From Octopus bimaculoides (taxonomy: Eukaryota), in assembly GCF_001194135.2 (NCBI RefSeq), contig NC_069003.1:33473372-33507547 (forward strand): DNA of 34,176 nt, in the 5' to 3' direction. Positions 38-34,176 of this stretch are shown here, piece after piece. Positions within the stretch are counted from its first letter, which is position 1. Every line of letters starts with the position of its first letter. The position numbers were made by a program, and so were the translations under genes. The notes under the pieces are model-generated. The model had not been told where the DNA came from and made no database searches. It saw nothing but the letters and a program-made list of their open reading frames with translations.

Positions 38-1523
38 CACACACACATATAAGAAAAGAGAAAGAGAAGCTATTTAAAAGCAGCCAACTTCACCCCCACC
101 TCATCCGATTGCTCTTCTTCTTTTCTCATTTTCCACTGAGTCTTGTAGAATGGTGTGTCTTGGGGAGTTTGGTACATTCCTGAAGTAACTTAGATATTGT
201 TTTTATAAGTTAGTGTAGACAGCAGCAGTGGCGGTGGTGGTGGTGGGTGTTAGTGGTGGTGGTACTTCATGCTGTTGTAGTTCCATCGGTAAAAGTATGT
301 CTGTGTAATTAGTAAGACATGTCTGAAATTATAATTGGAAAACATAGTGTGTGTGTATGTGTGTGTAGTTCTGTGTGAGAAAGAGAGTCTAAATTTGTGT
401 ATCTATGTGTGTTTATTGTATTGTGTGTGTGTGTGTGTGTGTGTGTGTGCATGTGTGGGAAAGAAAGTGAGAGGGAGAGAGAGATGTGGGGGTGTCTGTA
501 TTATGTACATGTATATATTACCATTCTGTGTGTGTGTGTGTGTGTATACATATTTCCTAGACAGACTAGGTGGTGGTGGTCGTGGTTGTAGTGGTGGTGG
601 AGGCAATGAAAGTCTGGTCTGGTTTGGCAGTGATTCTGTGTAATATTGGTGGGAGTGTTGTTGTTTAACCCTAGGTTAGCCCTGATCAGGCCAGCATATG
701 ATCAAAAAACATATTCTGACCATGACCATCCCATTATTTTCCTATGTAGAAGAAATCCAGGAGCACATCTAATGTGTCCTTTTCTAAGATGATAAGGGGT
801 CTGTCTAGCTGCTATTTCTAGGGGGTTGGCATAGCCATGTGGAAGCTCTTGTATTGACCAAAATGATAATGGTGTATGCAGCCGTGTAATGTGTGTAGTT
901 GTTATTTTTGTGGTAATTCTCTGTGTGTGTGTGTGTGTGTATTTCATAGTGTGTGTGTGTGTGTGGTTGTGTGTTTCATAGTGTATGTGTATGGTTGTGC
1001 ATGTGTAATTCATAGTGTGTGTTTATGTGGTTGTGTGTGTATGCTCCATAGTGTATGTGTGTATGGTAGTGTATATTTATATGGTTGTGTGTGTGTGTGT
1101 TTCATAATGTATATGTTTATGATAGTGTGTTTGTGTGGTAGTGTGTGTGTTTTATAGTGTATGTGTGTATGATNNNNNNNNNNTAGTGTGTGTTTATGTG
1201 GTTGTGTGTGTATGCTCCATAGTGTATGTGTGTATGGTAGTGTATATTTATATGGTTGTGTGTGTGTGTGTTTCATAATGTATATGTTTATGATAGTGTG
1301 TTTGTGTGGTAGTGTGTGTGTTTTATAGTGTATGTGTGTATGATAGTGTGTGTATGTTAGAACATATATGTATGGTAGTGTGTGTACATGTGGTTGTAGT
1401 ATATACAAGTATATTATTTATGCGTGTGTGTGTGTTAGAGTTCCTTTAATAGTGTTTACGAAGGTAGTGTGTGTTTGCTTCCAACCATTTGTGTTTAGTA
1501 AAGAATTTTTTCTTTTGTTTCAG

Positions 1524-2141
1524 AGACAAGATTTTGGTTCCTGAAACCAATCATTTGGTGTCTTCTGACTTTGAAGGTTGGATCTTAATGAATGTTACCA
1601 ATGCTGCCGACTCTTGGACCATCATGCCAGCTTCCAATATGGGTCTTTACCTCAAAATCACTGACATGAGCACAGGTGGGTCTTTTTCGCTCTTTGTTAT
1701 TTACTTACATCTAAATACTCATCTAGTAATACATACATACACACACACATATACTATATAATACACATACATGTAGTTCGTAAGCAAGCTACTTACCACT
1801 CCGTCCAGATATGTTCAAGGAACACATACACACATGCAGCTGAATATATTTATCCGCTTTCATAAATGCTCACATAAACACACACGTATGTTAGCATACA
1901 TACAAGTACACACACACACAGTGTATTTATTGTGTCAGGCTGTCAAAATACAAAATTAGGGTCAGCGTAAGGAGGGTCAAGTTGGCCATTAGTCTATGGG
2001 GAATTTCATGTAGGGGGTCCCTTTTAAGTGTCCCCACCTACCCTGATCTGATGCACTAACCCTCCATTGACTGGTGGCACTCGTAAATCATAATGTCTAT
2101 TTACCTACATACTGTATGTGTGTAGGTAAGGCAGATGAGTT

Positions 2142-2184
<43 letters not shown>

Positions 2185-2222
2185 GTGTGTGTGTGTGTAT
2201 GTGTTGTGTGTGNNNNNNNNNN

Positions 2223-2262
<40 letters not shown>

Positions 2263-3042
2263 GTGTGTGTGTGTGTATGTGTTGTGTGTGTATGTGTGAG
2301 TGTGTGTATGTTGTGTGAGTGTGTGTGTATTTGATCTTCCGTCCCCCAACTGGCAAAGTTGACTTGGCAACAAAATTCCAACTCACCCCACTCCTCTCAC
2401 CCCACCTCATTACTACTGTTTCATCATCCACCCTCTGTTTTTGTGTTTTTTTTTTTTNNNNNNNNNNCCCCCCCCCAGATACATAAACTTCTCTACTTGC
2501 CTCAGTGAGGTTTCCCTTAACATGCAGAGTACCATCACCATCATTGTTTAACATCCGTTTTCCATGCTGGTATGGGTTGGACAGTTTTGAGTGAAGCTGG
2601 CTAACCGGGGAACCATCCAGACTCCAAATTGGCATGGTTTCTACAGATGGATGCCCTTCCTAACGCCAACCACTTCACAGAGTGTGCTGGGTACTTCTTA
2701 CATGTCACCAACACGAGTGTGCTTATGCAGCGTCAGCACAAGTGCATTTTATGTGGCACCAGCACCCGTAAGGGACAAGCCTGTATGTATGGATGACAGC
2801 GATTTCTTCTTGGCTTCACGTGTCTTCTCAAGTACAGCAAATTGCCACAACTCCTGGTCCCAGGGATGATATGCCGGTGCCCCATTAAAAGGACTCTGTG
2901 CACTTTGTAAAGTGGTTGGCATTAGGAAGGGCATCCAGCCATAGAAACCATGCCAAACACAGACAGTTGAAGTCTGGTGCAGCAGTACTGGCTTGCCATG
3001 TCCTGTCAAAATGTCCAACCCATGCCAGCATGCAAAACGGAC

Positions 3043-3076
<34 letters not shown>

Positions 3077-5490
3077 CAACTGCAACAACTACAATAACAA
3101 TAACATGCCAAGAACTGGGGCAGCATGTACACTGGATAATGTAGTGTCCCACTGAGATTACAAGGGACTGAAATTAAGACAGGGTCGTCATGGGTGGAAC
3201 ACTTTGATCACCTGTCTGCTTGATTAACCTGGGGCTAATCAACAATAGCAACAACAACAACACCTCCCACTTTTCTTCAAAACAACCAAACTGCAACAGA
3301 AAGTGTAAGGATTTTTTCGGAGCTATTTTTTTTAGACCTTTTATTTAAAAAAAGAAATTGTCTTTTCCCTTTTTGATTTACATTTATTGACCCATATTTA
3401 CTTTCTTTTCTTTTCTTTCCATTGTTGTAGGTCAAGAATTAAGACCCAACCATATCGGTATTGTAGGACATAGAGGAGACCCCGATAAACAGGCCTTTTT
3501 GGTCTGCTTTTTCAAGATGAGTCAACAGCTTCATGTACGACGAACACGTTCTGCACGCCGGNNNNNNNNNNAGTCAACAGCTTCATGTACGACGAACACG
3601 TTCTGCACGCCGGCAAATGGATACTCGTACAGCAGTCTCACATCGGGATGATTCTCACTGGACGTGGAGACGAACACGTTAGTTATTTATTTTCTATGCC
3701 ATGTTTTTCATTGAGGTTACAGTCATGTGACAAAAGTCATATGGTGGCCCATTATTTAGACCAGAGGTTCCCAACCTTATCTTGGGTTTTGTAATCTTGT
3801 GAGCTACATGGCACTCTCAATAGTGCCAGAGCACCAAAAAGCATCCAGTACATGGTGTAAAATGGTTGGTATTAGGAAGGGCATCAAGCCATAGAAACCA
3901 TATCAAAGCAGACACTGGAGTGCGATGCAGTCCTAGAACCCAGCAGATCTTTGTCAAACTGTCCAACTCACGTCAGTACAGAACATGGATATTAAATGAC
4001 AATGATGATGGTCTATTGAAATATTGGCAGTGGACAACAGAAGTGGATTGGTCAGTTGGTCATGTGAGCCTACCATCCTATGATAATAATAATAATATTG
4101 GTGATTATCAATGTCTTGTTCTACACGTTTCACTCTCTCTCTCTCTCTTCTCTTCTCTTCTAGGACGTTATGTACGACCAGTCTGTCGAAGAAAGACGAT
4201 GTATGTTGACTTTGAAGATTTAGGCTGGCAGGTGAGATTAAAGATTTGTGTGTGTCTGTCATTAACCATTAGTCTTCTCTTTCAATATATCCAACCTTCT
4301 AGATAATTTGGTGCCTAGAGGAGTGATACCAATCCATTTTAGCTTGGCATCATGATCTTTTAGGTTTTATGGTTAAGACGTTTGCTTCCAAACCATTTGG
4401 TTTCTGGTTCAGTCCTGCTGTGCATCACCTTGGACATGTAGAAGTCAAGGCCATGGCTTCATCAGATATATCAAGGCTCGGGACTTAAGTACATGGTCAA
4501 ATTGTCCTCCATAATTTAATGTACTGGGTGAGAATAATAATTTAAATGGTATGATAAATGAAATAATTGATATAACAAATAAAATGTAATAGAAACCATG
4601 CCACATGTGAATAACCACGCTGCATGTTAGTAACTGCGCCACATGTGAGTAACCAATCCATGTATGAGTAACCACGCCACGTGAGTAATCATGTTACATG
4701 TTAGTAACTATGCAGCTCTTCTTCAAAACCCTGCTCTGACTCCCTTCTTGTGTACTTTAATCTCTCATCCCCTAGCATAATGCTGACCCCCACCTCCCAA
4801 TCTCCCCTGGGATTTGTAGATTTGTGAGATGCATGGTGATCTCAGTAGTGCTGGTGGCACAAAAAAAAACCCCCGATTCAATGCATGTTTCAAAGTGGTT
4901 GGTGTTAAGAAGGGTTTCCAACCGTAGAAACCCTGCCAGTGTTGACACCAGAGCATGATGCTGTCCTTGGACTCATGGGATTTGGTCAAACCATCCAACC
5001 CATTCCAGCATGGAATATGGACATAAAATAATGATGATGATGATGATGATGATAAAGAGATACACCTGTTATCAATATTGGAGATTGATTTTGTCAAGTA
5101 TTTCTTTCCTTTCTTTCTCTGTCCACTACAAATTTCTGGCCCCTTTCCTATGTAAGGAATCAATTAAAAGACATAATTATTTCTTCATTTGCCTTTTTCT
5201 TTATTTTCTCCTTTTTTTTTCCCCCACAGAGTTGGATCATTGCACCTGAGGGTTACTCTGCATTCTACTGCGACGGCGACTGCATATTTCCACTCGGTCT
5301 GAATATGAACGCCACAAATCATGCCATTGTACAACTGTTGCTTCACACAGTGAAATCTCAGACAATGCCTAAGCCATGCTGTTCCCCTACCAAACTGAGT
5401 GCCATCTCTGTGCTCTACTTTGATGATAATTCCAATGTCATTCTCAAGAAATATCGAAGTATGAAGGTGAAGGCTTGTGGCTGTCACTAG
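1524..5490 (+). CDS. BMP5-8: BMP5-8 (gbb/60A, BMP5/6/7/8 subfamily) ligand, copy A; 5'-partial. Exons 1524-1675, 3431-3677 (contains a 52-nt assembly artefact), 4164-4231, 5230-5490 (stop)
   Basis: All exons have AG/GT boundaries and compatible phases (2/1/1/0). Translation gives prodomain ...[10 protein letters not shown]...SNMGLYL..., [10 protein letters not shown], furin site RRTR-S, and a 7-cysteine TGF-beta domain ([37 protein letters not shown]...NATNHAIVQ...[40 protein letters not shown]). NATNHAIVQ and [15 protein letters not shown] are BMP5-8 hallmarks. The introns fall at positions matching those I recall for vertebrate BMP7. Confidence 0.93.
2530..3075. mobile_element. Two oppositely oriented copies of SINE-like family C with (ATG)n tail (2530-2760 -, 2900-3075 +). 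Others: 3865-4020, 4885-5055, 10005-10150 (+)
   Basis: Shared GGTTGGCATTAGGAAGGGCATCCAGCC.TAGAAACCATGCCA...TCCAACCCATGCCAGCATG...GATGATGAT. Confidence 0.7.
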
Positions 5491-5960
5491 TGTTCACCCC
5501 ATACCTCTACGTCTTGTAACACTGTATTGCACACACACACACACATTCATTGGANNNNNNNNNNCATTGATGCATGTGTGCATGGGACGGCTGAGTGCAC
5601 TTGCAATGCCACTGTCCTGCTTTTTCTTTTTCTTTTGTGTTTTCAATTTGAGTGTGCAACAAATGTTGCACATTTGCAGGTATCAGGATTTAGTATTTTT
5701 TTATGTACAGTCTCTATGGACATATGATGAATGAATGTGTATGGCTGTGTGTGTGTGTGTGTGTGTGTATGGCTGTATGTGTGTGTGTGAGTATGGCTGT
5801 GTGTGTATGCTTGTATATATCTGTATACCCCTTTCAATTCATGTTACAGTTGGTAAGGTCTTCAAGAATACTGCTGAAAACAACTAAACAAGAACAAATT
5901 AGAAAATATACAGTGTGTGTTTGTAGCACAACATACACACGCATACATATACATACATAC

Positions 5961-5993
<33 letters not shown>

Positions 5994-5999
5994 CACACA

Positions 6000-6767
6000 C
6001 AGGGTAATGCATAATAAAGTAGCCCAGGTTTTGTAGCACAGTGTAAATACAGAAATAAATTTACACAGACACAAAAAAGTACCCAGCTTTTTCTTTGTGT
6101 CAACGAATTATTTCAAGCTCTTGCAACTGCTGTTCAGAAGCCATGTGCAGTAATTTACTTGTTTGCTTTTGTCATCCACTTTTAATTGCGGTACGCACGT
6201 GAAATGATATGGCTTCAATGTTAGACTTTCCAATACCTGTTGGCTCGACCTCCTGCGTCAATGTATGCATCAACGTTTTCTGGACTTCTAATAATCCTTT
6301 TGCGAATGTCCCAAATAACTTCCGATGTTTAAACTGGAGGATATCGTTGTTTTGGGGGCATTGTACAATAACCCCATAGCGTGCCACTTCTTAACCAACA
6401 TCCGTATCGTTCTATTTGTAGGTAAGCCTTTCCTTGGAAACTTGACTTCAAAATTTTCACACGTTTGCTTAACAGAACCCATTCTCACCTATGCTTCCAT
6501 CATCTCCATCCTTTCCATTATTGAGTACATCATCTTACAGAAAAGACTAGAGATATTCACTCGATGCAATCTTATAATCAACTAATGTGGTGAGGACAAT
6601 GTAGCCAACGATCGACTAGTGCACCACCTCCGTTCAGCAGTTACAAGAGGTCAAAATAACTCAATGATGCTTGCAAACGAAAGGCCGGGTACTTTTCTGT
6701 GTGTGTAAATTCATTTCTGTATTTACCCTATGCTACAGAAACCAGGCTACTTTTCCATGTACCACTG
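6000..6767 (-). mobile_element. Internally deleted Tc1/mariner-superfamily element with ~100-bp TIRs and a decayed N-terminal transposase HTH
   Basis: 6000-6100 is the reverse complement of ~6675-6767 (roughly 80% identical by eye), and TA follows the right end. The minus strand reads MMYSIMERMEMMEA*VRMGSVKQTCENFEVKFPRKGLPTNRTIRMLVKKWHAMG, typical of a mariner-type DNA-binding N-terminus. Confidence 0.75.
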
Positions 6768-6821
6768 TATATATTACGTGTATGCATCACATCACACATT
6801 GTATACACAAACATGTATGTA

Positions 6822-6823
6822 TG

Positions 6824-6902
<79 letters not shown>
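6822..6902. repeat. (TA)n microsatellite, representative of many (TA)n/(CA)n/(GA)n/(ATG)n/(AAT)n tracts (e.g. 1-50, 423-448, 2143-2330, 32041-32087)
   Basis: Seen directly. These tracts explain most ORFs in the supplied track. Confidence 0.95.
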
Positions 6903-6904
<2 letters not shown>

Positions 6905-7740
6905 TTGGACAAGAAATAGAAAGTCCTTGGTACAGTATTATATATTTGAAAAAATGAATAGAAAAGGCTTTTCTGGCAATGTTTCCATTTTCGTAATTAG
7001 GTGTTTATATCTAATTATTAAAATGGAAAAATTATCAGGAAAACCATTTTCATTAATTTTTTCAAATATACATACATACATATATACATACACACACATA
7101 TATGCACATACATACACACACATATACATACATATATGTGTATGTGTGTACATAACACAGACAGACAATCTTCCCACTGAAAGCTATTTCTTCTTTCTCT
7201 TTACTAATCCAGAATTCTTCAAATGCTCACACACACATACCTTCATTTACACTCATACCTTCCCTCACACTCACACATACCTGTAATTCCCTCGTACAGT
7301 AACATAAGAACTTTGACACATTATCACACACATGAAGGTGTGTTTAGTTTGCTGTACAGAACAATCTCAGTAGTGTGAATTAACAACTGCAACATGAACT
7401 ACAACAGTTACAACAACAATAATACTAGTAGTAGTAGTAATAGTAGTAGCAATAGTAGTAGTAGTAACAACAATAGCAACGCTGAACAGCAGCAGCAACA
7501 GCAGCAGCAAGAACATTAACAACAGAATTTGATATTAAGGAGAATGCGTGTAAGATTGTTAATAATGTGTGGGTTGTCTGAGAGATTTCTAACATTGTGG
7601 GAATGTGTGGGAAATTGCTGATTCTGTGGGAAATGTGTTGGTGAGAACATCTGGAAGATTGCTAACACTATGAAGATAGTTTAGAAGTTTGTTAAAGCTG
7701 TGGAAATGTTTGGTAGTCAGTTATGCTCTATGGGAAAATA

Positions 7741-8008
7741 TCTGGAAGGTTGCTAATGTCGCAGAGAATGTTTGAAAGGTTGCTAATGTTGCAGAGAATA
7801 TTTGAAAGGTTGCTAATGTCGCAGAGAATGTTTGAAAGGTTGCTAATGTCACAGAGAATGTTTGTAAGGTTGCTAATTTTGCAGAGAATGTTTGAAAGGT
7901 TGCTAATGCTACGACAAAAGTTTGGTAGGTTTTTAATGCCACAGAGAATATCTTGACAGTTGCTAATGCTGCAGAGAATGTTTGGAAGGTTGCTAACATT
8001 GGAGAATG
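7741..8008. repeat. 30-bp minisatellite, 9 units (consensus TTTGAAAGGTTGCTAATGTCGCAGAGAATG); degenerate units upstream to ~7575
   Basis: Exact 30-nt periodicity is visible directly. Confidence 0.9.
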
Positions 8009-11420: not shown

Positions 11421-14400
11421 ATGGTTGTCTCATTTACTGTGTTGTTACTATGTTTAGTCTGGTCACATGCAGTCGAAGGTTCGAAAACAGACAACGGCAA
11501 AAGACCACAAGAGGTTACCACGTCTCTCGGCTCTGTAGTGGTGGTCGGGGCTGGAGTTGCCGGATTAGCAGCGGCCAGGTCCCTCACCAACTCTGGCCAG
11601 TGGGATGTTACTGTGTTAGAAGCACGAAAGGAGCGCTATGGGGGTCGTGTGTGGACCGACCGCATCAACTTTGACCGTGCAAAAGGTAAGAAGAAATTGC
11701 TTCCGCTTCATGTTTGTTGGTCATTTGGTATTTTAATAGATTTAATTAAAGACAGTGAACTAATTATAACAACGGGCAAACAAATCTATACAACCTTCTT
11801 ATGTAAAGCAGATATCGCTATTAAGGAAAACTACCATTCCAGTATCTTCCTATTTTAGCGGCGTAAAATCGTGTTACCTTTTAAGTGTTTTTCTTCTGTC
11901 ACGGCCAGAAAATTACCTTTTTTTAAAAAAGTTTGTTACTGTGTACTTTTTTCTAAAAAGTAAATTAGTCAATAAAATAAAATTGTACAAACAGTTCTTG
12001 TTTTCCATTTAATTTGTCTTTCATCCCGTAAGTTTCTGAAAAATGGGTATTTTTAGATGAAATTTTCTACTGATACCTTTCCGATGGTTTGAATTAGGAT
12101 TATATCGGAATTTAATGTGGTGGGGGAAAATAAAATTACTTTCTCTCCAGCTAGTAATCTAATAACTACTTAGTGCTGAACTTGCTAGAAATAACAGCCA
12201 AATTCTCACATCATATTCTACTAGCTTTAAAAAAAAGTAAGGTTTCTTTTAATAACCTAATCCTGGTGATCTTTGNNNNNNNNNNNNNNNNNNNNNNNNN
12301 NNNNNNNNNNNNNNNNNNNNNNNNNNNNNNNNNNNNNNNNNNNNNNNNNNNNNNNNNNNNNNNNNNNNNNNNNNNNNNNNNNNNNNNNNNNNNNNNNNNN
12401 NNNNNNNNNNNNNNNNNNNNNNNNNNNNNNNNNNNNNNNNNNNNNNNNNNNNNNNNNNNNNNNNNNNNNNNNNNNNNNNNNNNNNNNNNNNNNNNNNNNN
12501 NNNNNNNNNNNNNNNNNNNNNNNNNNNNNNNNNNNNNNNNNNNNNNNNNNNNNNNNNNNNNNNNNNNNNNNNNNNNNNNNNNNNNNNNNNNNNNNNNNNN
12601 NNNNNNNNNNNNNNNNNNNNNNNNNNNNNNNNNNNNNNNNNNNNNNNNNNNNNNNNNNNNNNNNNNNNNNTTCATAGAGTAAAAACCTGTTTCTTTCTTC
12701 TCCACAGAAAATCTGAAGAACTCACTGTAAGAAATATTAACCATCAACTAACTTCACTTAAAGTAAAATATATTCCATTTTAAATTCAAATTACGACAAA
12801 CGTAAATAAACAAACGAAGTTTGCTTTTAGAAGCTTTGAGATGTCTTAGAAAGTTAAAGAAGTGATTTTAAATTCTCAATCGCAGAATAATGCTAATAAT
12901 ATAGCCTGAACAGGATAAAATACCCCTATTTTGCAGAGAAAAGTGTAGGGGGCTAGCTGTGGCCACCTACACTTTTCTCTGCAAAATTAGGGGTAGTTTA
13001 TCCTGTTCAGGCTATAATATTCCATTTTCTTTTTTTTTTTGGTTAATAGGTCTTGAAGCTGATCTGGGAATTGTTATGTTTGATGATGATGACCCTGAGA
13101 ACATGCTGAGTGAATTTTTGGGTCCATTTGAAGTGAGTCCAAAGCGTATTGAATTGAAGCAGTTGATTGATGGTAACACAAACAAAGTCTACCGTGATCT
13201 GGAGTTTGAAAATCTGGCTCAGATCCATCAACAGGTGAGTTATTTGTTACCCATCGCAATCTCCTATACACTAACTACCGAGACATTCAGCTTTGATAAC
13301 CCAAGTAGACATAGACCAACAAAGTGATTATTTCACAGGTTACACTCAACCTAAATATTTTCCTGCATACTTCGTATCTCCCCTCTGCTGTCGTATACCC
13401 ACTCTACACAACAAGGTCAAGCTAACATACCTTGTCACATATTAACATGACATACCAACGACAGGGCTTCTCTATGGTTGCTCGACCTGCTAGAAATAGC
13501 AGTCAAGTCTCCTTGATCGCACCCTACCATTTTTAGAATAACAAGTATGGTCATTGCTGGAATGCCTGGTCAGTTACAGTTAGTTGTATGTCTGTCTGGT
13601 CAGAGTTGACTTGATTTAAACCACAACATACAGTATGGCATAGCTGCCGTATTCCATCACTTCTATACTCTATAACAATGGTTCTCAGCCATTTTCCCCC
13701 TCCGAATCCCTTTCATTCCTATTTCACTAACTTGGACCCTGATAGCCATTCAATGTTTAAAAAATCTTAAATTTTTACAATACTTTTTACAAACAGGGAG
13801 TCAGTCAGTCAGACAGCACTGGCAACAGCCATGCTCTCAAATAGTGTCTTTTATGTTCCAGTGACACGGGAGACAGTCAGGTGGCACTAGCAGTGGCCAT
13901 GCTTGAATAGTGCTTTTTATGTGCCACCGGGCCAGGACCAGTCAGGTGGCACTGACAGCAGCCATGCCCTCAAATGGTGTTTTTTATGTGCCAGTGACAC
14001 GGGAGACAGTCAGGTGGCACTGGCACCAGAAGTATATTATTATATTATGAACTACTATTAAAGACATGTAGTGGTCTGTAAATAATTCTTCCAAATTTTG
14101 GTTCAAGGGCAGCAGTTTTGAGGGGAGGGGAAGTCAATTACATCGACCCTCCCCCCCAATGCTCAATGAAAGACTTTATGATGTTAATTACATAATCACT
14201 GTGTAATCCATTTCCTATAATTGTTTCTCTTTTTCCCCCTTCGACAGCTTTTAATGGCTGCCGTGCAGACTTCCAGTTCACCAACCAAGGACGTTTCATT
14301 GCAAGAAGCCATTGACAATTTATATCGACTGCAACCAGTTTTCAAAGAGACCCTTCCACCAAACGTCTTCACTACTTTGACTTTAGCCAGATACAATCTG

Positions 14401-17400
14401 GCCCCAAAGTTAATCTCTTGCAGGTCCTTGAAATCTCGCTTTAACTTGCTCCCTAATACAGTTATTGAAGAAGGGTTCCAAGAAGTCCTCGACAGGTAAC
14501 ATCTTCCTTTTTTGATTCGTTAATTATTGACAGGGCCATTTGTATATTTGTAGCAGAGATGTCTGACTGATTCAATCACCCAGTACATTACTGGTATGTT
14601 CCTCTCTCATTCCCATGTAGCCCTTTCTCTGCTCTTTTAAATAAATCAGATGAATCCCTTTTCTTCTTTTACTTTTCATGAAAAACATTGTTTAAACATT
14701 TTAGGTTGGTCAGTGGTGTTGAGCTGGAAGAAGCACCGTTAAATCTGGAGATGAATAAGGTAGTTTCTCAGATCAAGATAGCCCAAGTGGACAATACCAG
14801 TAAGGTTTTGGTCCGAACCAAGGATCGGCGCCAGAAGAAAGCAGATGCAGTCATTGTTGCTGTGCCATTAGGGGTTCTCAAAGCCTCCCGAATAGCGTTT
14901 GATCCTGTACTACCTGTTGAAAAACGTGTGGCTTTGAATTCCTTAGGTAAGGTGAAATTTATGACACAAAACAGCTCATTCATAAAAGCAAACCTTTTAA
15001 TAATAATAATAATAATAATAATCCTTTCTACTGGAGATATAAGGCCTCAGATTTGTGGGGAGGGGACTAATTGATTACATTGACCCCAGTGTTTCACTGG
15101 TACTTAATTTATTGACCCCGAAAGGATGAAAGGCAAAGTCGACCATGGCGGAATTTGAACTCAGAAGAGATTGGCCCCCCCCCCCGTACTTGTTTTTTAA
15201 AGTCTGGTACCTATTATCATCTGTCTTGCTGAACTACTAAGTTACAGGGATGTAAACAAACCACCATCGGTTGCAATGTGGGACAAACACAACACTAAGA
15301 CACACACATAGATACATACATTAACACATACACACTCTTATGAGTGGTTTCTTTCTGTTTCTGTCCACGAAATTCTCTCAGGGGCTATAATAGGAAACAA
15401 TTACCCAAGATGCCACACAGTGAGACTGAACCTGGGACCATGTGGTTGGGAAGTAAATGTCTTACCACATGCCACACCAGTGTAATTATGATTTGTGTAC
15501 ATGTGAATCTGTATTTGTCATCTAGTTTCCATTCATGATGTATTAAGTATAATCTTTCTTTCTTTTTTTTCTTCCATTTCTTCACCCAACGTACAGAGGT
15601 TAGCAGTGTGAATAGTGTTGTCTTTAAATTTGCTTCAATATTTTGGCCGAGGGACACAGAACTCTTCCATTTTGCTGTATCCGATATGAGTGAAATTGGA
15701 TTGATGACCACTTGGTTAAACACTGGCTGGTTGTCTCGTCGTAAGGATCCATATTTGACCACCTTTATCCAAGGCAATACTGCTACCAAGTTTGGAAATT
15801 ACTCTGACACCCAACTTAAAACTATCGGTTTGTATCTTAAAACTATTTATTCATATCAAATATCAAAGAACATGGGATCTTCTGTGTTTTGTCTCCGTCT
15901 TACGAATGAGTAACTAGTAACTCTGTTACTTCAAACCTTATTTCCTTGAGGAAATCTTAAAGAAATTTATTCCAGTTTTAACTATTTTATAAAGAGAATA
16001 TTAGTTCTTGTTTAACCCCAGGTCAGCCTCAATTGAGTAAATTCATGATTCATGATCAGAGGTCTTCTGTTTGTGACACTTCATCCTGTTTTTTTCTTTT
16101 GTTATTGGTGGGAGTGTGATTAAGGAAGATTTGGCTGCTATTTCTAGCAGGTTGAGTGATTACATAAAGGCTTTTTTGTTTGCTTCAAGGTGTTGGTCAA
16201 ACAGTAATGTTGTTTGTGTGTCTGACTGTCTGAAAGACAATAACTTCCATACAAAACTCCAATAACTAACAATTCTCTTGACTGTTTCTTCTAGCACTGG
16301 AACGGTTGACAGCAATGTTTCATTTGAAGAATTTGTCCAAAGATGCCATCTTGAGTGTGACATCAAGTAACTGGGCATCTGATCCTTTCAGTCAGGGACT
16401 TCTCTCTTACCCCACCATTGGTGAGTATTCTCATGTCAATTTTAGTTATCTAGATGTGTGCGTGTGTGGGACATGATAGCCTCATCTTGTCATATGATGG
16501 CCATTTCACATTCAACCTGATTAGTTTAATTTACTTTCATCATTACATGTGCATGAATAGTCACTATGCAGCCATCACCATAGAATTTTATAAAATACAA
16601 ATCAGATCAAGAAATGAATAGTGAGACATCAGTATGTCTTTGGATTTAACCCTTGCGTTAATGTATTTATTTTGAGATGCTCTGTGTTTCTTTCAATTAT
16701 TTTAAATATAAATAAGAACTTAGTAAAATAACTTAGTTAACATTAAGCTGGTGTTAGGAACATAAATTGTGACTAAGGTTTGGTGGAAGATTTTAATTCA
16801 AAACTTATGAAAACAAAACATTTGTGCTACAGAGCCAGAGACAGTTTCAGCTGGGTTGGTATCAAAAGGGTTAAGTGATAAATGCTTGCACAACTCTTTT
16901 GCCACTCTCTCAGTCACCAATGACAAGCTTTGCAAGATATCAGGTCCTATTTTAACTATAAGACTAGAAGTCTTGCTGCCTCCATTGAAATGGCGCCAAT
17001 CTGTAAAAATGTTTGTTTGCTTTAGTGAAGAAACATCACTAAGTTTTGTCTCCAAAGATTTAACATATACACCACCCATTACCCCACCTCGCTCTTCTCC
17101 ATGTGTTAATGGTGTTGACTCATTTCACAGACCTTTGATGGCAGAGTTTTTTTTTTATATTTATGTTCTATCTTTTACTTGTCTCAATCATTGAAAAGCG
17201 GCCAGTCTGGGGCACCAGATTCAAAGGTTTAGTCTAGTGGTTCTCAACCGGGATCCATATGACCGTTTTGGGGCTGTTGTAGAAGACACTCGCTCAAAGT
17301 GCCACACCATGGGACTGAACTTGGAACCATGTCGTTGAGAAGCAAACTTCTTACCACACTGCCATGCCTGTACCTATTTCTTTTATTATTTAAGAATAAT

Positions 17401-17797
17401 TTTTGTTATAACGTTGTTGATGCAGGGTTTTTTTTGTTTTTTTTAATCCTTTTCACTCAGCATTCTATATCAGAAATATTGTTTCTCATTTTCATCCTTT
17501 TCTCTCTGACCGAAAGGTATGTCCCAAACCCAGTGGGACGCTGTCTCCAAGCCTATCTGTCCTCACATCTACTTCGCCAATGACTATACTGACTCCACCA
17601 GATTCGGGACCATCCAGGGGGCGTTTAGATCTGGACTCCGAGCAGCTGAACACCTCATGCAAGGGTGCCGTGGCAATGTCCCAGACCCCAAAATGAGATA
17701 TTTAAAAGAACCGAAGGGATCTAGAAAAAGAGGTCACGGAAAAAAGCAGGTCAGAGCAAGCGTAACGGTCAACAGAACCAAGAAAGAAGAACTATGA
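11421..17797 (+). CDS. Flavin-containing amine oxidase family protein (polyamine oxidase/LSD1-like fold), 525 aa, signal peptide, C-terminal KEEL. Exons 11421-11685, 13050-13234, 14248-14495, 14705-14946, 15597-15827, 16295-16420, 17517-17797
   Basis: Seven AG/GT exons join in frame (1578 nt including stop). Motifs appear in family order: VVVVGAGVAGLAAA (GxGxxG), VLEA...GGRVWT, DLG, ADAVIVAVPLGVLK...F.P.LP, F...FW, W.SDPFSQG..SY, FANDYT...GTIQGAFRSGLRAA. The N-terminus MVVSFTVLLLCLVWSHAVEG is hydrophobic. No orthologue name can be assigned from the sequence alone. Confidence 0.88.
12780..13016. mobile_element. Foldback MITE-like element with terminal hairpin (arms 12900-12949 / 12966-13016); related copy at ~31845-32040
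   Basis: Arms are near-perfect reverse complements. The same arm sequence (AAACAAACGAAGTTTGCTTTTAGAAG...GTGATTTTAAATTCTCAA; TATAGCCTGAACAGGATAAA) recurs at 31.85-32.04 kb. Confidence 0.75.
13795..14028. repeat. ~70-bp tandem repeat (about 3.3 units, CAGTCAGGTGGCACT...GCCATGC...TTTTATGTGCCA)
   Basis: Direct repetition is visible. A related motif occurs inside the family C SINE copy at ~2745-2765. Confidence 0.7.
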
Positions 17798-22097: not shown

Positions 22098-22123
22098 GTA
22101 ACTAACAACAAAAATATTTGAAA

Positions 22124-23496
22124 ATGGATTCGTTTGAATTTTCAGAAGAAGAAATAAGAAACGAACTTGCGCGGTTTGGGATTAAGGATATCGACCAGAG
22201 TACTTTACGTGAATTTCGAGAAGACCTTCTAAATTTGATGAAAGAAAGTAGTTACAATTCTCTTCAGAATGTTGCTAAATCCACTACAATTTCCCCTTCT
22301 TCCAGCAACTCACCTGTCACTTGTCCAAACTTGTCTCCGTCGTCTCCTCCGGAACCCTTTTCTATAACTTCTCCAACGTTCACATCACCAGCTGCCAAGA
22401 ACGTTGAAGATGCTAAGTCATGTCTAACTCACACAGGTAATTATTGTTCTGTTAATTCCATGGACCCGTCGTCTGTTACCGTTTCTCACAATCGGCCCCA
22501 GAATACAGCTGAAAGTTCCGAACACGTTGCTTATAGAAGCTCTCAGTTGTTCAACAGTGCCAATAAGGTAGATGGTCACTCGGAAATGACACTTAGCCAT
22601 CAATACACACACACTCAACAGCCACTGACTAATCGATCGGAAACAGAACATGAAAAACAGGAGAATCTCCTTCGAACTTTCACCAGAAAAAACATTCCGC
22701 AGGTAAATAGTTTTGATAATCCCAAGAACAAAGAAAACGCTTGGTCTCGTCATATTGCACCTTCGTCATCTTCCTCCTCCCTCTCATCACAAGAATCGGT
22801 CCCCAAACCATCACAAATCGCTTCCATCGACACCGAAAAACCTCCACTGCTAAACACTTATGTTACCAAGAGGAAGGTCTCCCGCAAAGGCCCCGATGGT
22901 AAACGTTATATCGACGAAAGTGAATCTGTGTGTAGTACCAGTACCGCAAGTAGTATCTGTGGCAGTTGCTGTAGCAGTATCGTTGACCCTGCTGAGTACC
23001 AGAATCGTCTGAGAGAGATAACAAACAGAGACGGCTATTTCTATCCGAGATCCCTAAGTTCCTGTGATAGCCGGCCCNNNNNNNNNNNNNNNNNNNNNNN
23101 NNNNNNNNNNNNNNNNNNNNNNNNNNNNNNNNNNNNNNNNNNNNNNNNNNNNNNNNNNNNNNNNNNNNNNNNNNNNNNNNNNNNNNNNNNNNAGTTACTC
23201 CAACACCGCCGAGGTTGAAGAAAAACAGAAAGACAGACCCCGTGAGCAGGTTCCGTGAATTTCAGAACTACTGGAACTTGCACAAGCCTCCCGGTGAAAA
23301 TAATCACAACGCCCTTCGGTGGAGCATTAAAGAGAAAATTGCCAAACACGATGTCATTGGAAGCCGTCCACGGAAAACTTTCGTGCCCAATAATTATGTG
23401 ATACCCTCACAAAACCCGAGACATTCTCTTCGATGGCAGATACGGACTGATCTTGCCTATGGTGTCATGCCAACCGTTGCCAGTTACGACTACTGA
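22124..23496 (+). CDS. HYLS1: Centriolar/ciliogenesis protein HYLS1 (hydrolethalus syndrome protein 1), apparently single-exon CDS interrupted by assembly gap 23078-23192
   Basis: C-terminal HYLS-1 box RKTDPVSRFREFQNYWNLHKPPGENNHNALRWSIKEK...FVPNNYVIPSQNPRHSLRWQIRTDLAYGVMP resembles human KTDRVARYFEYKRDW...PGEDHRKELRWGVRE...[31 protein letters not shown] (recalled). The central KRKVSRKGPDGKRYIDES resembles KRKVLRRKPDGEVLVTDES. ATG at 22124. The frame offset across the gap reflects the estimated N count. Confidence 0.9.
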
Positions 23497-24606: not shown

Positions 24607-24640
<34 letters not shown>

Positions 24641-25907: not shown

Positions 25908-25928
25908 TTTATTTTTTTGCATTTTATT
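25908..25928 (-). promoter_or_regulatory. Two candidate AATAAA polyadenylation signals of BMP-B
   Basis: TTTATT at 25923-25928 and 25908-25913, ~380-400 nt downstream of the BMP-B stop. Confidence 0.4.
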
Positions 25929-26308
25929 GTTTTCAGCAGTATTCTTGAGGACCTTACCAACTGTAACAATGAATTGAAGGACGCATACAGATATATATAC
26001 ATGCATACATACACTCACACACAGACAGCCATACACACACACACAGCCATACACATTCATTCATCATATGTCCATAGAGACTGTACATAAAAAAATACTA
26101 AATCCTGATACCTGCAAATGTGCAACATTTGTTGCACACTCAAATTGAAAACACAAAAGAAAAAGAAAAAGCAGGACAGTGGCATTGCAAGTGCACTCAG
26201 CCGTCCCATGCACACATGCATCAATGTCTTTCGGCTAGCAGGAGTCCAATGAATGTGTGTGTGTGTGTGCAATACAGTGTTACAAGACGTAGAGGTATGG
26301 GGTGAACA

Positions 26309-29300
26309 CTAGTGACAGCCACAAGCCTTCACCTTCATACTTCGATATTTCTTGAGAATGACATTGGAATTATCATCAAAGTAGAGCACAGAGATGGCAC
26401 TCAGTTTGGTAGGGGAACAGCATGGCTTAGGCATTGTCTGAGATTTCACTGTGTGAAGCAACAGTTGTACAATGGCATGATTTGTGGCGTTCATATTCAG
26501 ACCGAGTGGAAATATGCAGTCGCCGTCGCAGTAGAATGCAGAGTAACCCTCAGGTGCAATGATCCAACTCTGTGGGGGAGAAAAAAAGGAGAAAATAAAG
26601 AAAAAGGCAAATGAAGATATAATTATGTCTTTTAATTGATTCCTTACACAGGAAAGGGGCCAGAAATTTGTGACACACACAAATACACACATGCAGATTC
26701 ATGTACACTCAGATATACACATGGATACATAAATGCACACAGATACATATGCAGACACAAATAGAGACATGCATAGATGCACACACACAAATACATAGAT
26801 ACACGCATATAGATATATACATGTACAAACACAGATACATACATACACCATACACACACACACACACACAGTTACGCACATGTACACATGATGGACTCCT
26901 TCAGTTACTGTCGACCACTTTCACTCACCAAAAATGCAGAGAGAAACAAAAGCCTTACCTGCCAACCTAAAGCTTCAAAGTCAACATACATTGTATTTCT
27001 TTGGCAGACTGGTCGTACATAACGTCCTAGAAGAAGAGAACAGAGAGAGAGTGAAACATGTAGAACAAAACATTAATATTCTTTGCTACTCTAAGCACAA
27101 GGCCTGAAATTTTGGGGGAGGGGTGTCAGTCGATCAAATTGACCCCAGTATGCAACTGGTACGAAAGGCAAAGTCGACCTCAGGAGAGGGGAAGGCGTTG
27201 AACTAGCAGAATCATTACTGTGCTGAGCAAAATACTTAGAGGCATGAGTGTATTTGAAATGGAATAATTTAAGAAGAGAGTGGAGTGAACAGTGTGATTG
27301 CAGAATCCCAAAAGCACAAGTTCTGCTGGGGCTGGACATCCTACGAGATTTACAGACAACAGGTGGACCTGCACAATTGCTGAATGGTAACCAAGAGATC
27401 AGAAAAGGCCACTTTGAAGGCCTCCATGATGGTCATTTGAAAGGCCGACTGAATGGGCAACAGTAGTTATGTAATCCCTGTTGTGTGTGTGTATACACTT
27501 AAACCAAACATTACATGAAATGCAGAGCTAGCTCCTTTAGTTTCATATTTAAGACAAAAATTGCCCATTACCCAATGAGATTAAATCTGTGATATTTGAG
27601 GTGCCTCTAAATTACATATTCTTTTCTACTCTAGGCACAAGGCCTGAAATATTTTTGGGGAGGTGGCCAATCGATTAGATTGACCCCAGTACACAACTGG
27701 TACTTAATTTATTGACCCCAAAAGGATGAAAGTCAACCCCGGCAGAATTTGAACTCAGAATATAAAGACGGATGAAATACCGCTAAGCATTTTGCCCGGT
27801 GTGCAAATGTTTCTGCCAGCTCACATTAGTATTATTAGTATTATTATCATTATTACTATTATCATTATATATTGCAATCAATCTTTGAATGAAATCTTTA
27901 GTACATAATGATTAATAGTGACTGCAGAATATTTTAAATTTCAGTGTAGTACATGTTATCATTGGGCCACTATATGACTTTTGTGACATGATTGTAACCG
28001 CAAAGTAGAACAGCAAAAGAAAATGATGACTAACGTGTCCGTCTCCACGTTGACTGAGAATCATCCCGACGTGAGACTGCTGTACGAGTATCCATTTGCC
28101 GGCGTGCAGAACGTGTTCGTCGTACATGAAGCTGTCGACTCATCTTGAAAAAGCAGACCAAAAACGCCTGTTTATCAGGGTCTCCTCTATGTCCTACGAT
28201 ACCGATATGGTTGGGTCTTAATTCCTGACCTACAACAGTGGAAAGAAAAGAAAAGAAAGTAAATATGGGTCAATAAATGGAACAGTAAATCAGAATGGGA
28301 AATAAAGGGTAAGAGAAAAAGACTAAAACATGAGCAGTTAAGGACTTTTAAAGCTCAACACTTTAGCATTTAAACTGGCCATATCCGGCCCAAATATTCT
28401 GTTGTGTGTGTCTGTGTATTTGTTTGTTTCCCACTCACCCATCACTTGACAACTGGTGTTAATTTGTTTTTGTTTATGACCCTGTGACTTGGTGGTTCAA
28501 CAAAAAGAGAATGATAGAGTAAGTACCAGACTTAAAAAATCATAAGTACTGGGGTTGATTCGCTTGGCTAAAACCCTTCAAGGTGGTGCCCCACCTGAGC
28601 TGCAGTTGAAAGACTGAAACATATAAAAAAATAAAAAGATGATTAAATAAAAGAACCAAAAAAAAAAATGTATGAAAATCCCACCTGTGCTCATGTCAGT
28701 GATTCTGAGGTAAAGACCCATATTGGAAGCTGGCATGATGGTCCAAGAGTCGGCAGCATTGGTAACATTCATTAAGATCCAACCTTCAAAGTCAGAAGAC
28801 ACCAAATGATTGGTTTCAGGAACCAAAATCTTGTCTCTGAAACAAAAGAAAAAATTCTTTATTAAAACACAAATGGTTGGAAGCAACATTTTAAAGGAAG
28901 AACAAACGAGAAGCTGTGATGTACATGCCTTTCTTCTTCCAATGAACAGTATTAGTAACATGAGAGAACTAATATAAGCTAGTCAGGTAACTTTGTAATT
29001 AGTCAACCAGTGAAGTACCCCCCACAATGAACTCAACCCTTTTACTTTAACATTGTAGGGGCGGGGTTTTGATTTCCCAATCTCAAGATGGTAAAAAAAG
29101 TTCCCAACTCAAGTGTGTTTAGTAGCTCTGGCTGGATATGTGGTTCTGAATTATACAAAAGCCAAAAGACAGAGACAGGTGAGGGAACAATAGACAGGTG
29201 GATCTGTTTGATGCTCAGCAAAAATGCAAGAAGAAGTCTTTGATGTTTCAAGCCTACACTTTTCTGGATATCTCTACTGATGAAATCCTGAAGTTCAGCC

Positions 29301-32037: not shown

Positions 32038-32087
<50 letters not shown>

Positions 32088-33021: not shown

Positions 33022-34168
33022 CTGTCAAAGTTGCTGAATAAGAACAATTTGTTATCAACAAGTCTTGAATCAATAAATCAAATGTTGTTGTTATTCTTTA
33101 GCCCTGGGTTGATACTGGTTGAGCAAACCAATGATCATAGGCTTTCCAGCTGTGACCATCCTGTTTTAAGGTAAGATGGTCACAACTGGAATGCCTATGA
33201 AGGAGTTTCTCTGTGGTTTCTAGATCTGCCAAAAACAGCAACCAAATTTCTTGACACCTATATGAACAACATTAGCATCTTCCCAACCTTTCAAGTTATC
33301 ACCAACCTCTCATGATTCTAGCATCAACAAGTGGAGATATCCAATGGGTTTATTTCCTCCATTTTCTCCCCACACTTCTGCAGGTATTTTGTCCCCTCCT
33401 GGGACCTTTCTACCTGTGACTTGCATGGTTGCAATCAATATACTTTCTCCACATTTGATGGCTCATTCTTCGATACATCAACCGTGTGGTATATCGCATT
33501 TTCCAAAGTTTACCAATTGATGTGTCTTGGTTCACTGATTAATTGCTGGAAGGGATCTGCGAAACAGTTTGGTACTTGTCCCCTATTCTCAAAACATTGT
33601 TGATTCACCAGCTGAGCCACAACCCTCTTATGTACAACCTACAGTGCAACACAGAAGCTACACACATGACTGAAATTAGCAACTTGATCTCTTTGTTTTC
33701 TCACCTTCTTTCATCTTTTATCTGTTGCCTGTTTTGGTCATTAGGCAGTGGCCATGCTGGGATACCACCATAAAGAATTAGTAGGAAAAGTCATATTTTT
33801 CACACCACATTGTGAAAGTCTTGACACCACCCACTACTATTTGTAGGGGGTGGTATCAAATTTTAATGACCTTCCCTCCTGATGTAAGTTAGAGGATTGC
33901 CTCCACACGAGTGAGTGTATATAAAAGTTGTGACACGAATCCAGTTCAAGTGATGATGGGTGTAGAACCGATGTCAATACTTACTGTTCATCAACTCCCT
34001 GTTGGATGGTAAACACCTCAATACGATAAGTTGTATGGCGACCACGTCTGTCCTTGCTTTTATACAACCTCAGTTCGGCCCCTGTCACTGTCTCTTGTGG
34101 GGACACTTCTCCAAAGTCAAAGAAGAAAGTTCGATCCCTTTCATGGCGAAGGAAATGGATTTTGTGCA
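26309..34168 (-). CDS. BMP5-8: BMP5-8 ligand, copy B; 5'-partial. Exons 34168-33985, 28836-28685, 28229-28035, 27026-26959, 26569-26309 (stop)
   Basis: Reverse-complement paralogue of copy A with the same exon lengths (152, 195, 68, 261 nt). It has an extra upstream prodomain exon ([36 protein letters not shown]...), which resembles BMP7 [24 protein letters not shown]. Splice sites are canonical and there are no stops or frameshifts. Confidence 0.94.
27260..27470 (+). mobile_element. Decayed RTE-clade LINE 3' fragment in a BMP-B intron
   Basis: [27 protein letters not shown] resembles the RTE C-terminal WAGH...DNRW...W.PR..KRP.GRP motif. Confidence 0.55.
30750..31090. mobile_element. Palindromic MITE-like element: 151-bp arms (30750-30900 / 30940-31090), 39-bp loop
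   Basis: About 8 mismatches over 151 bp when the arms are compared by hand. Confidence 0.85.
33190..33620 (-). mobile_element. Decayed RTE-clade LINE reverse-transcriptase N-terminal fragment
   Basis: [14 protein letters not shown] and [10 protein letters not shown]...NHR resemble the K(A/S)PG.D.IPAE.W / W..A.IVPI.KK / NYR RT motifs; multiple frameshifts. Confidence 0.55.
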
Positions 34169-34176
34169 CTGCAAAT

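What the first reader, a model, noticed from the sequence alone, without database searches (positions are those of the whole stretch)
5128..5745. Mosaic identity between the BMP copies: terminal exon plus ~250 nt of 3'UTR identical, central exons 6% diverged
Seen: differences per exon are 1/152, 10/195, 6/68 and 0/261. No synonymous change occurs in the 152- and 261-nt exons, versus 8 in the 263 nt between them. The tract A ~5128-5745 / B ~26055-26670 is ~95% identical in the intron end and identical through exon and proximal UTR, then decays at a (GT)n tract. Purifying selection does not explain absent synonymous and UTR divergence. Inference: recent arm-to-arm gene conversion between inverted paralogues, keeping most of the cystine knot identical while the N-terminal part of the ligand diverges. 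Caveat: copy A has a 10-N gap (5555-5564) inside this tract, so collapse or gap-filling of a near-identical repeat could give the same picture.
Basis: partly seen in the sequence, partly recalled or inferred. Interest (0 to 1): 0.7.

Follow-up and report, generated by a model that had tools for sequence, protein, structure and literature searches.

The report
Gene conversion between inverted octopus BMP paralogues
Two inverted copies of a BMP5-8-type growth-factor gene in Octopus bimaculoides keep their last exon and nearby 3'UTR identical by copying sequence from one copy to the other, while the middle exons stay copy-specific; this is a real but well-known kind of process, seen before in mammalian BMP8A/BMP8B.

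Summary
The per-exon differences are 1/152, 10/195, 6/68 and 0/261, with 8 synonymous changes, all in the two central exons. A 5220-5745 is identical to B 26579-26046 over 516 read bases. No permutation out of 20,000 produces a run that long.

The N10 gap at 5555-5564 lies 64 nt after the stop codon, in the 3'UTR. It stands for 18 nt that are invariant in the three comparison sequences, and both flanks are colinear with them.

The window is Octopus bimaculoides chromosome CM046623.1. Gene order is BMP-A(+), amine oxidase, HYLS1, BMP-B(-). The independent long-read O. vulgaris assembly has the same order, so the duplication predates the species split.

In a four-way comparison, the last-exon block (5128-5883) has 13 sites where A equals B within each species but the species differ, and no copy-specific sites. 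The 68-nt exon block and the 3' half of the 195-nt exon block have 20 copy-specific sites and 2 of the other kind (Fisher p = 7e-8).

Whether the identity in O. bimaculoides is truly perfect cannot be checked without reads. The closest precedent is the inverted, mosaically converting mammalian pair BMP8A/BMP8B.

The parts
5128..5883 (+). Copy A homogenised block: last 102 nt of the intron, the terminal exon and 393 nt after the stop codon. It is homologous to copy B at 26671-25928.
   Evidence: Four-way site classes are 13 species-type and 0 paralogue-type.
5220..5745 (+). Core of perfect A/B identity (516 read bases plus N10). It is bounded by a T-run on the left and a (GT)n tract on the right.
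5555..5564 (.). Assembly gap (N10) in the 3'UTR of copy A. It stands for 18 nt that are invariant in copy B and in both O. vulgaris copies.
5230..5490 (+). Copy A terminal coding exon (261 nt including the stop codon). It encodes 86 residues of the ligand domain and 6 of its 7 cysteines.
4164..4231 (+). Copy A 68-nt exon (first cysteine and start of finger 1). It has 6 differences from B and is 68/68 identical to O. vulgaris copy A.
3431..3677 (+). Copy A 195-nt exon (end of the prodomain, the RSARR cleavage site, start of the ligand). It contains an artefactual 42-nt duplicate plus an N10 gap at 3562-3613.
1524..1675 (+). Copy A 152-nt prodomain exon. It has 1 difference from B. The homologous block is 1475-1680.
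25928..26671 (-). Copy B partner of the homogenised block. The identical core is 26046-26579 and the terminal exon is 26309-26569.
26959..28836 (-). Copy B exons 28836-28685, 28229-28035 and 27026-26959 with their introns. The introns are colinear with O. vulgaris copy B.
33984..34169 (-). Copy B coding exon 2 (prodomain). Exon 1 lies outside the window.
11421..17797 (+). Amine-oxidase gene in the ~20-kb spacer between the two BMP copies.
22124..23496 (+). HYLS1-like gene in the spacer, interrupted by the 115-N gap at 23078-23192.

Best explanation
The window holds two paralogous BMP5-8-type genes in tail-to-tail inverted orientation, about 20 kb apart on one O. bimaculoides chromosome. The duplication is older than the split between O. 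bimaculoides and O. vulgaris.

Since that split, non-reciprocal copying between the two loci has repeatedly overwritten one copy with the other. This is interlocus gene conversion: repair of a break in one copy using the paralogue as template. It has acted across the block made of the last 100 nt of the intron, the terminal exon and the proximal 3'UTR. In O. bimaculoides the latest event left at least 526 nt identical.

The segment from the 3' half of the 195-nt exon through the 68-nt exon has not been converted since before the split and keeps fixed copy-specific differences. It encodes the region around the furin cleavage site, the ligand N-terminus and the start of finger 1. Both copies remain intact and conserved.

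Shown: the mosaic, the conserved synteny, and the opposite site patterns in the two kinds of block.

Inferred: the break-repair mechanism, the number and timing of events, and the reason the central segment escapes. That reason could be selection for distinct ligands or too little identity for pairing.
For: - The window is 100% identical to O. bimaculoides CM046623.1.
- Order and orientation (BMP-A, amine oxidase, HYLS1, BMP-B) are the same in O. vulgaris.
- Copy A introns and downstream sequence are orthologous between species at 86-92% identity. Copy B introns are likewise orthologous at about 88-92%.
- Last-exon block: 13 sites with A=B within species and the species differing, and 0 copy-specific sites. 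The 3' half of the 195-nt exon block plus the 68-nt exon block: 2 and 20. Fisher p = 7e-8.
- Distances: core bimA-bimB 0 and vulA-vulB 6 against 11-15 between species. 68-nt exon block: A-A 5 and B-B 3 against 12-16.
- All five species-type sites in the exon are synonymous.
- Two species-type sites lie in the left flank 5128-5219. There copy A differs from copy B at three sites, so that stretch cannot simply be pasted copy B sequence.
- Rate-scaled expectation for the core is 12 differences (P of zero = 5e-6) using the flank ratio, or 31 using the central-block ratio.
- O. vulgaris copy A carries a relic acceptor plus 17 nt of the last exon. This is followed by about 245 nt of B-type intron and then the complete block. 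That is the footprint of a B-to-A templated transfer specific to that lineage.
- The O. vulgaris assembly is ONT-based (PMC10700109).
Against: - The perfect core in O. bimaculoides comes from a short-read assembly and contains a gap exactly inside copy A's tract. Three of the window's other 10-N gaps have unmerged duplicated flanks, so local assembly quality is poor. Some true A/B differences could have been lost.
- Only two species were compared. There is no outgroup, so direction and lineage of most events are not polarised.
- O. vulgaris copy A was not obtained for the 152-nt exon.
- No signal of GC-biased conversion could be assessed.
- Short-read polishing of the O. vulgaris assembly could in principle blur paralogues. 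However, 6 substitutions and structural differences between its copies survive in the core.
Confidence: 0.85

Rival explanations
1. The perfect identity of the 526-nt core in O. bimaculoides is an assembly artefact. On this view a collapsed near-identical repeat was placed twice, or copy A's gap was filled with reads from copy B. The true divergence would then be like the flanks (about 3-8%).
For: - The gap at 5555-5564 sits inside copy A's tract, while copy B is gap-free from 23193 to 29644.
- The 10-N gaps at 2213, 3562 and 29645 have exact 68-, 42- and 65-nt duplicated flanks, which shows imperfect gap handling.
- In O. vulgaris the same core has 6 differences, not 0.
Against: - Both halves of the core sit in un-gapped runs that continue into A-specific sequence (3572-5554 and 5565-8409).
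- Concerted evolution of this block is seen independently in O. vulgaris, and also in the O. bimaculoides left flank, where A and B are distinguishable.
- This rival would change only the age of the last event, not the process.
Confidence: 0.12
2. Copy A's 3' end was replaced by a fresh partial re-duplication of copy B's 3' end, inserted by non-homologous joining. On this view it was not homology-driven conversion.
For: O. vulgaris copy A has a non-homologous left junction: a relic acceptor plus 17 nt of exon, followed by B-type intron.
Against: - O. bimaculoides copy A has no such relic. A-type intron runs straight into the shared 102 nt.
- The nested pattern, with diverged flanks around a perfect core, fits repeated homologous events.
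- The right boundary is shared by both species.
Confidence: 0.08
3. Strong purifying selection on the cystine-knot exon and on a conserved UTR element alone keeps the two copies alike.
For: The core evolves at about 0.4 times the flank rate between species.
Against: Between species the same exon has 5-6 synonymous differences and the UTR core has 5-8. Within species the copies share them. Selection does not make paralogues co-vary at silent sites.
Confidence: 0.01
4. The two copies are alleles (haplotigs) of one locus, wrongly scaffolded as an inverted duplication.
For: The assembly is gap-rich and the species is heterozygous.
Against: - The same two-copy arrangement, with two genes between the copies, is present in the O. 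vulgaris long-read assembly.
- 20 copy-specific sites are shared across species.
- Each copy's introns have their own orthologues.
Confidence: 0.01

Closest known systems
Mammalian BMP8A/BMP8B gene pair (PMC2720389)
   Same: Both are BMP5-8 subfamily ligands. Both are two-copy inverted pairs on one chromosome with the duplication older than the species compared. Both show mosaic evolution, with some exons concerted by gene conversion and others divergent (divergent in rodents in the mammalian case).
   Different: The octopus duplication is independent and in a mollusc. The copies are about 20 kb apart rather than 235 kb. In octopus, homology is confined to exon-centred patches. In non-rodent mammals nearly the whole gene is concerted. 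Here the concerted parts are the terminal exon with its UTR and probably the prodomain exons, while the divergent part is the ligand N-terminus and finger 1.
Exon-limited interlocus gene conversion in small gene families, e.g. primate gamma-globin HBG1/HBG2 and Drosophila Hsp70 inverted pairs (from general knowledge, not tested here)
   Same: Short tracts of hundreds of bp, boundaries often at simple repeats, silent sites homogenised, repeated events over time.
   Different: Those pairs are mostly homogenised over the whole coding region. Here a fixed copy-specific segment persists between converted blocks.
Arm-to-arm conversion in sex-chromosome palindromes (PMC3723533, PMC8981503; listed, abstracts only)
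   Same: Inverted orientation and intrachromosomal non-reciprocal exchange.
   Different: Palindrome arms are more than 99% identical over many kb. Here only about 1.6 kb of roughly 5.8 kb per arm is alignable, at 89-100% identity, and the spacer holds two genes. It is not a palindrome in that sense.

Membership tests
Interlocus gene conversion / concerted evolution of paralogues | The duplication predates the speciation used for comparison, with both copies at conserved positions in both species. | tested here: met
   Same order and orientation in O. bimaculoides and O. vulgaris. Each copy's introns are orthologous between species.
Interlocus gene conversion / concerted evolution of paralogues | Within the tract, paralogues are more alike within a species than orthologues are between species. 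| tested here: met
   Core: 0 and 6 within species against 11-15 between species. 13 species-type and 0 paralogue-type sites.
Interlocus gene conversion / concerted evolution of paralogues | Outside the tract, orthologues cluster, giving a phylogenetic conflict along the gene. | tested here: met
   The 68-nt exon block and the 3' half of the 195-nt exon block have 20 paralogue-type and 2 species-type sites. Fisher p = 7e-8.
Interlocus gene conversion / concerted evolution of paralogues | The identical fragment is longer than expected from the distribution of differences (GENECONV-type permutation), including at silent sites. | tested here: met
   Run of 516 against a permutation maximum of 250. 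Silent sites only: 342 against 197. 0 of 20,000 permutations in each case.
Interlocus gene conversion / concerted evolution of paralogues | GC-biased substitution pattern in the converted tract. | not tested
   There is no outgroup to polarise the 13 species-type sites.
Interlocus gene conversion / concerted evolution of paralogues | Read-level or copy-anchored confirmation that both copies really carry the identical tract. | not testable with these tools
   No reads were available. An exact-ORF look-up in other assemblies found nothing.
BMP5-8 (60A/Gbb-type) TGF-beta ligands | TGF-beta propeptide plus C-terminal TGF_beta cystine-knot domain with seven cysteines and an RXXR cleavage site. | tested here: met
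   Pfam PF00688 (E = 5e-15) and PF00019 (E = 1e-36). RSARR site and seven cysteines in the translation.
BMP5-8 (60A/Gbb-type) TGF-beta ligands | Closest to BMP5/6/7/8 rather than to BMP2/4, GDF or activin. | tested here: met
   Best solved-structure matches are BMP6 and BMP7 (E = 4e-52 to 4e-51), against BMP2 at 6e-41. Best database hits are BMP6/7/60A proteins. No tree was built.
Large inverted-repeat palindrome with arm-wide conversion | Continuous arm-to-arm identity of about 99% or more over the whole arms. | tested here: not met
   Only exon-centred patches align, at 84-100% identity. The introns are unrelated between the arms.

The most novel reading that the evidence does not exclude
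The partition may be maintained by selection. Conversion would keep the receptor-binding C-terminal 86 residues and a proximal 3'UTR regulatory element of the two ligands identical, for example so that they stay interchangeable or can heterodimerise. Converted alleles would be selected against in the furin-site, N-terminus and finger-1 segment that gives each ligand its own properties. Together with mammalian BMP8A/B, this would point to a recurrent, convergent mode of evolution for inverted BMP5-8 duplicates.
Probability: 0.15. Interest if true: 0.5.

Novelty: new member of a known kind. Interest (0 to 1): 0.35.

Why it matters
This is a clean, cross-species-supported case of mosaic concerted evolution in a cephalopod developmental signalling gene. 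It arose independently of the mammalian BMP8A/BMP8B case.

Practical consequences:
- Trees or dS-based dating of these octopus BMP paralogues will be wrong unless the blocks are separated.
- Probes or primers in the last exon or proximal UTR cannot distinguish the two genes. Only the 68-nt exon and the 3' half of the 195-nt exon can.
- The O. bimaculoides gene model for copy A is disturbed by an artefactual duplicate and gap inside an exon.

It does not reveal a new mechanism.

Tried and rejected
- An exact-ORF look-up of the copy-B intron-to-exon ORF in other assemblies, to get independent O. bimaculoides contigs, found nothing on record.
- Argonauta hians was tried as an outgroup. Its amine-oxidase locus plus or minus 10 kb has no BMP hit by tblastn, and its upstream neighbour is an enoyl-CoA hydratase gene. 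It gave no polarisation and does not date the duplication.
- The O. sinensis amine-oxidase locus ends about 2 kb short of copy A.
- The first protein search returned only one octopus BMP, the O. vulgaris isoform X2, and no full-length A or B proteins. I therefore could not fetch O. vulgaris copy A's 152-nt exon. I ran no further search on it because that exon is secondary to the finding.
- Haplotig and selection-only explanations were considered and rejected (see the rival explanations).
- An RNA-mediated (cDNA) origin of the tract was rejected, because the tract includes 102 nt of intron.
Full report
**What the window is.** The window is 100% identical to Octopus bimaculoides chromosome CM046623.1 of assembly GCA_001194135.2 (window position = locus L002 position + 1420). 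It contains 14 runs of N.

The two "BMP copies" carry a TGF-beta propeptide and a TGF_beta cystine-knot domain (Pfam). Their best matches among solved structures are BMP6 and BMP7 (E = 4e-52 to 4e-51), ahead of BMP2 at 6e-41. They are therefore BMP5-8 (60A/Gbb-type) ligands.

Mapping the O. vulgaris protein P0005 shows that the gene has six coding exons. Copy A (+ strand) has only these four in the window. Copy B (- strand) also has exon 2, at 34169-33984.

Between the copies, which lie tail to tail, are an amine-oxidase gene (11421-17797) and a HYLS1-like gene (22124-23496).

**Checking the observation.**

| Exon | Copy A (+) | Copy B (-) | Differences | Synonymous |
|---|---|---|---|---|
| 152 nt | 1524-1675 | 28836-28685 | 1 | 0 |
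| 195 nt | 3431-3677 | 28229-28035 | 10 | 5 |
| 68 nt | 4164-4231 | 27026-26959 | 6 | 3 |
| 261 nt | 5230-5490 | 26569-26309 | 0 | 0 |

All splice sites are canonical and the frame is continuous.

The 195-nt count depends on recognising an artefact. The N10 gap at 3562-3571 inside that exon is flanked by an exact 42-nt duplicate (3520-3561 = 3572-3613). Once duplicate and gap are removed, the exon is colinear and in frame with copy B.

The tract A 5128-5883 aligns with B 26671-25928. There are three differences in the 102-nt intron end. There are none from 5220 to 5745 (B 26579-26046). After the (GT)n tract at 5746 there are indels and about 10 substitutions, and homology is lost abruptly at 5883/5884.

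**The flagged gap.** The gap at 5555-5564 begins 64 nt after the stop codon, so it is in the 3'UTR and reading frame is not at stake. Both flanks align colinearly with copy B and with both O. vulgaris copies. Each of those has the same 18 nt (CTCCTGCTAGCCGAAAGA) at that place. The gap is real and small, about 18 nt rather than 10. The sequence on its two sides is continuous as far as comparison can show.

**Is it more than chance?** Over all alignable A/B blocks there are 1608 columns and 84 differences. The longest identical run is 516, and none of 20,000 permutations exceeds 250. With only non-coding and third-codon positions, the run is 342 against a maximum of 197.

**Architecture of the two arms.** A and B align only in exon-centred patches:

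| Copy A patch | Identity to B |
|---|---|
| 116-366 (intronic) | 84% |
| 1475-1680 | 98.6% |
| 3381-3751 | 97% falling to 89% |
| 4106-4236 | 87% |
| 5128-5888 | 93%, including the perfect core |

The remaining intron sequence is unrelated between the arms and is rich in repeats.

**The cross-species test.** The O. vulgaris chromosome-scale assembly GCA_951406725.2 is ONT-based, assembled with NextDenovo, then polished (PMC10700109). The loci fetched from it contain no N. It holds both copies in the same order and orientation:
- L001 carries copy B and HYLS1.
- L004 carries the 3' part of copy A, the amine oxidase and HYLS1.

Copy B of the window is colinear with L001 through its introns at about 88-92% identity. 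Copy A's introns and downstream sequence are colinear with L004 at 86-92%. The duplication therefore predates the split of the two species, and the haplotig explanation is excluded.

I aligned four sequences (bimA, bimB, vulA, vulB) and classed each variable site. "S" means A=B within each species and the species differ. "P" means A=A and B=B.

| Block | S sites | P sites |
|---|---|---|
| Last-exon block 5128-5883 (715 ungapped columns) | 13 | 0 |
| 68-nt exon block | 0 | 9 |
| 3' part of the 195-nt exon block (from exon nt 94 on) | 2 | 11 |
| 5' part of the 195-nt exon block (3381-3520) | 0 | 0 |

In the 5' part of the 195-nt exon block, four of the five A/B differences are singletons of bimB.

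Fisher's test of the last-exon block against the central divergent part gives p = 7e-8. P sites begin at exactly 5884 in both species.

Distances tell the same story:

| Region | Within species (A-B) | Orthologues | Other comparisons |
|---|---|---|---|
| Core (512 columns) | bim 0, vul 6 | - | 11-15 between species |
| Terminal exon alone | 0 and 1 | - | 5-6 between species |
| 68-nt exon block | 12-16 | A-A 5, B-B 3 | - |

Within the 68-nt exon itself, bimA and vulA are identical at 68/68. The five exonic S sites are all synonymous.

**Why this is gene conversion rather than selection or artefact.** Silent and UTR sites co-vary between paralogues within each species. Selection cannot do that.

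The pattern is also present in an independent long-read assembly. There the two copies still differ by six substitutions, by a CA-repeat length and by a structural scar, so they were not merged.

In the O. bimaculoides left flank (5128-5219), A differs from B at three sites and so is certainly A-derived. That flank still has two S sites and no P site.

O. vulgaris copy A also preserves a footprint:
- an A-type intron end plus 17 nt of the last exon (L004 4764-4880);
- then about 245 nt of B-type intron;
- then the full block.

This is a B-to-A templated transfer with a non-homologous left junction. It is absent from O. bimaculoides, so the two lineages had separate events.

**What remains uncertain.** In O. 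bimaculoides the flanks of the block are 3-9% diverged between A and B, while the core has no differences. Scaling by the between-species rate predicts about 12 differences in the core (P of zero = 5e-6). So either a very recent second conversion covered 5220-5745, or the short-read assembly lost real differences there.

The gap inside copy A's core, and the unmerged duplicate flanks at three other 10-N gaps, are reasons for caution. Against collapse, both halves of the core sit in un-gapped runs that continue into A-specific sequence.

I put about 0.12 on the perfect identity being overstated. That would change the age of the last event, not the process.

The limits of the perfect core are a T-run and a (GT)n tract. 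Both are mutation-prone, so the last tract may extend a little further: to the next substitutions at 5181 and 5775.

**The other blocks.** In the 152-nt exon block (1475-1680), bimA and bimB differ by 3 events, while bimB differs from vulB by about 9. With a pre-speciation duplication this also implies homogenisation after the split. O. vulgaris copy A was not available for that exon.

The overall picture has three homogenised blocks of different ages around one resistant segment, roughly 3576-4236. That segment encodes the region just before and after the RSARR cleavage site, the ligand N-terminus, the first cysteine and the start of finger 1. About seven copy-specific replacements there are fixed in both species.

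Whether the segment is protected by selection or simply by too little identity for pairing is an inference I cannot test.

**Comparison with what is known.** The nearest precedent is in the same subfamily. Mammalian BMP8A and BMP8B form an inverted pair 235 kb apart, with concerted evolution by gene conversion lasting over 100 million years and a mosaic of concerted and divergent exons in rodents (PMC2720389).

The octopus pair is an independent duplication with a shorter spacer and patchy, exon-centred homology. It is not a palindrome of the sex-chromosome type, because arm-wide identity is absent.

I found no paper describing this octopus pair in two literature searches. That is weak evidence of absence.

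**Verdict.** This is a new example of a well-known process, with a neat parallel to BMP8A/B and practical consequences for annotation, phylogeny and probe design. It is not a new kind of system.

Noticed in passing
window 2145-2290, 3520-3613, 29580-29719: Three 10-N gaps are flanked by exact duplicates of 68, 42 and 65 nt. These are unmerged overlapping contig ends, not missing sequence. The one at 3562-3571 lies inside a coding exon of BMP copy A and would disturb a gene model. The annotated product of copy A is 380 aa, against 424 aa in O. vulgaris.
   Followed up: partly
L004 4764-5125 (O. vulgaris copy A): There is a relic copy of the intron end plus 17 nt of the last exon, followed by about 245 nt of copy-B-type TG-rich intron, upstream of the functional last exon. 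At one 4-nt site the relic and vulB share ATAA, while vulA-functional, bimA and bimB share CTGG. This suggests further small exchanges.
   Followed up: partly
window 116-376 and 30163-30389; L001 24963-25197: An intronic block about 1.2 kb upstream of the 152-nt exon is retained in both paralogues (84% A/B) and is about 95% conserved between copy B orthologues, above the roughly 90% intron background. It could be a regulatory element or an unannotated small exon.
   Followed up: no
P0005; L001 30163/32134 junction; window 5230-5252 in the +1 frame: The annotated O. vulgaris isoform X2 of copy B skips the 68-nt exon. This shifts the frame in the last exon and ends the protein at ...WRRTQLDHCT, giving a prodomain-only product with no ligand domain.
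   Followed up: no
window 22118-23496: The single-exon HYLS1-like ORF is broken by the 115-N gap at 23078-23192. The annotated product is 365 aa here, against 427 aa in O. vulgaris and O. sinensis.
   Followed up: no
window 3558 and 3637: Two species-type sites sit between copy-specific sites inside the otherwise divergent 3' half of the 195-nt exon. This could be a very short conversion patch (under about 65 nt) or parallel changes.
   Followed up: no
window 16645-16874 vs 29478-29783; 12781-13030 vs 31836-32039: There are further 88-95% repeats, both inverted and direct, shared between introns of the amine-oxidase gene and intron 2 of BMP copy B. A copy is also found elsewhere in the O. vulgaris locus (L001 about 11890-12260). 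These are probably transposable-element copies.
   Followed up: no
window 28405-28438 vs L001 27159-29779: In O. vulgaris copy B, the intron between the 152-nt and 195-nt exons carries about 2.6 kb that is absent from O. bimaculoides. O. vulgaris copy A has about 1.2 kb extra after the 195-nt exon (L004 2063-3244). Intron content turns over quickly at this locus.
   Followed up: no
L003 (Argonauta hians): In Argonauta the amine-oxidase gene is preceded by an enoyl-CoA hydratase gene. No BMP sequence lies within 10 kb on either side, so the BMP-A / amine oxidase / HYLS1 / BMP-B arrangement may be specific to the Octopus lineage.
   Followed up: partly
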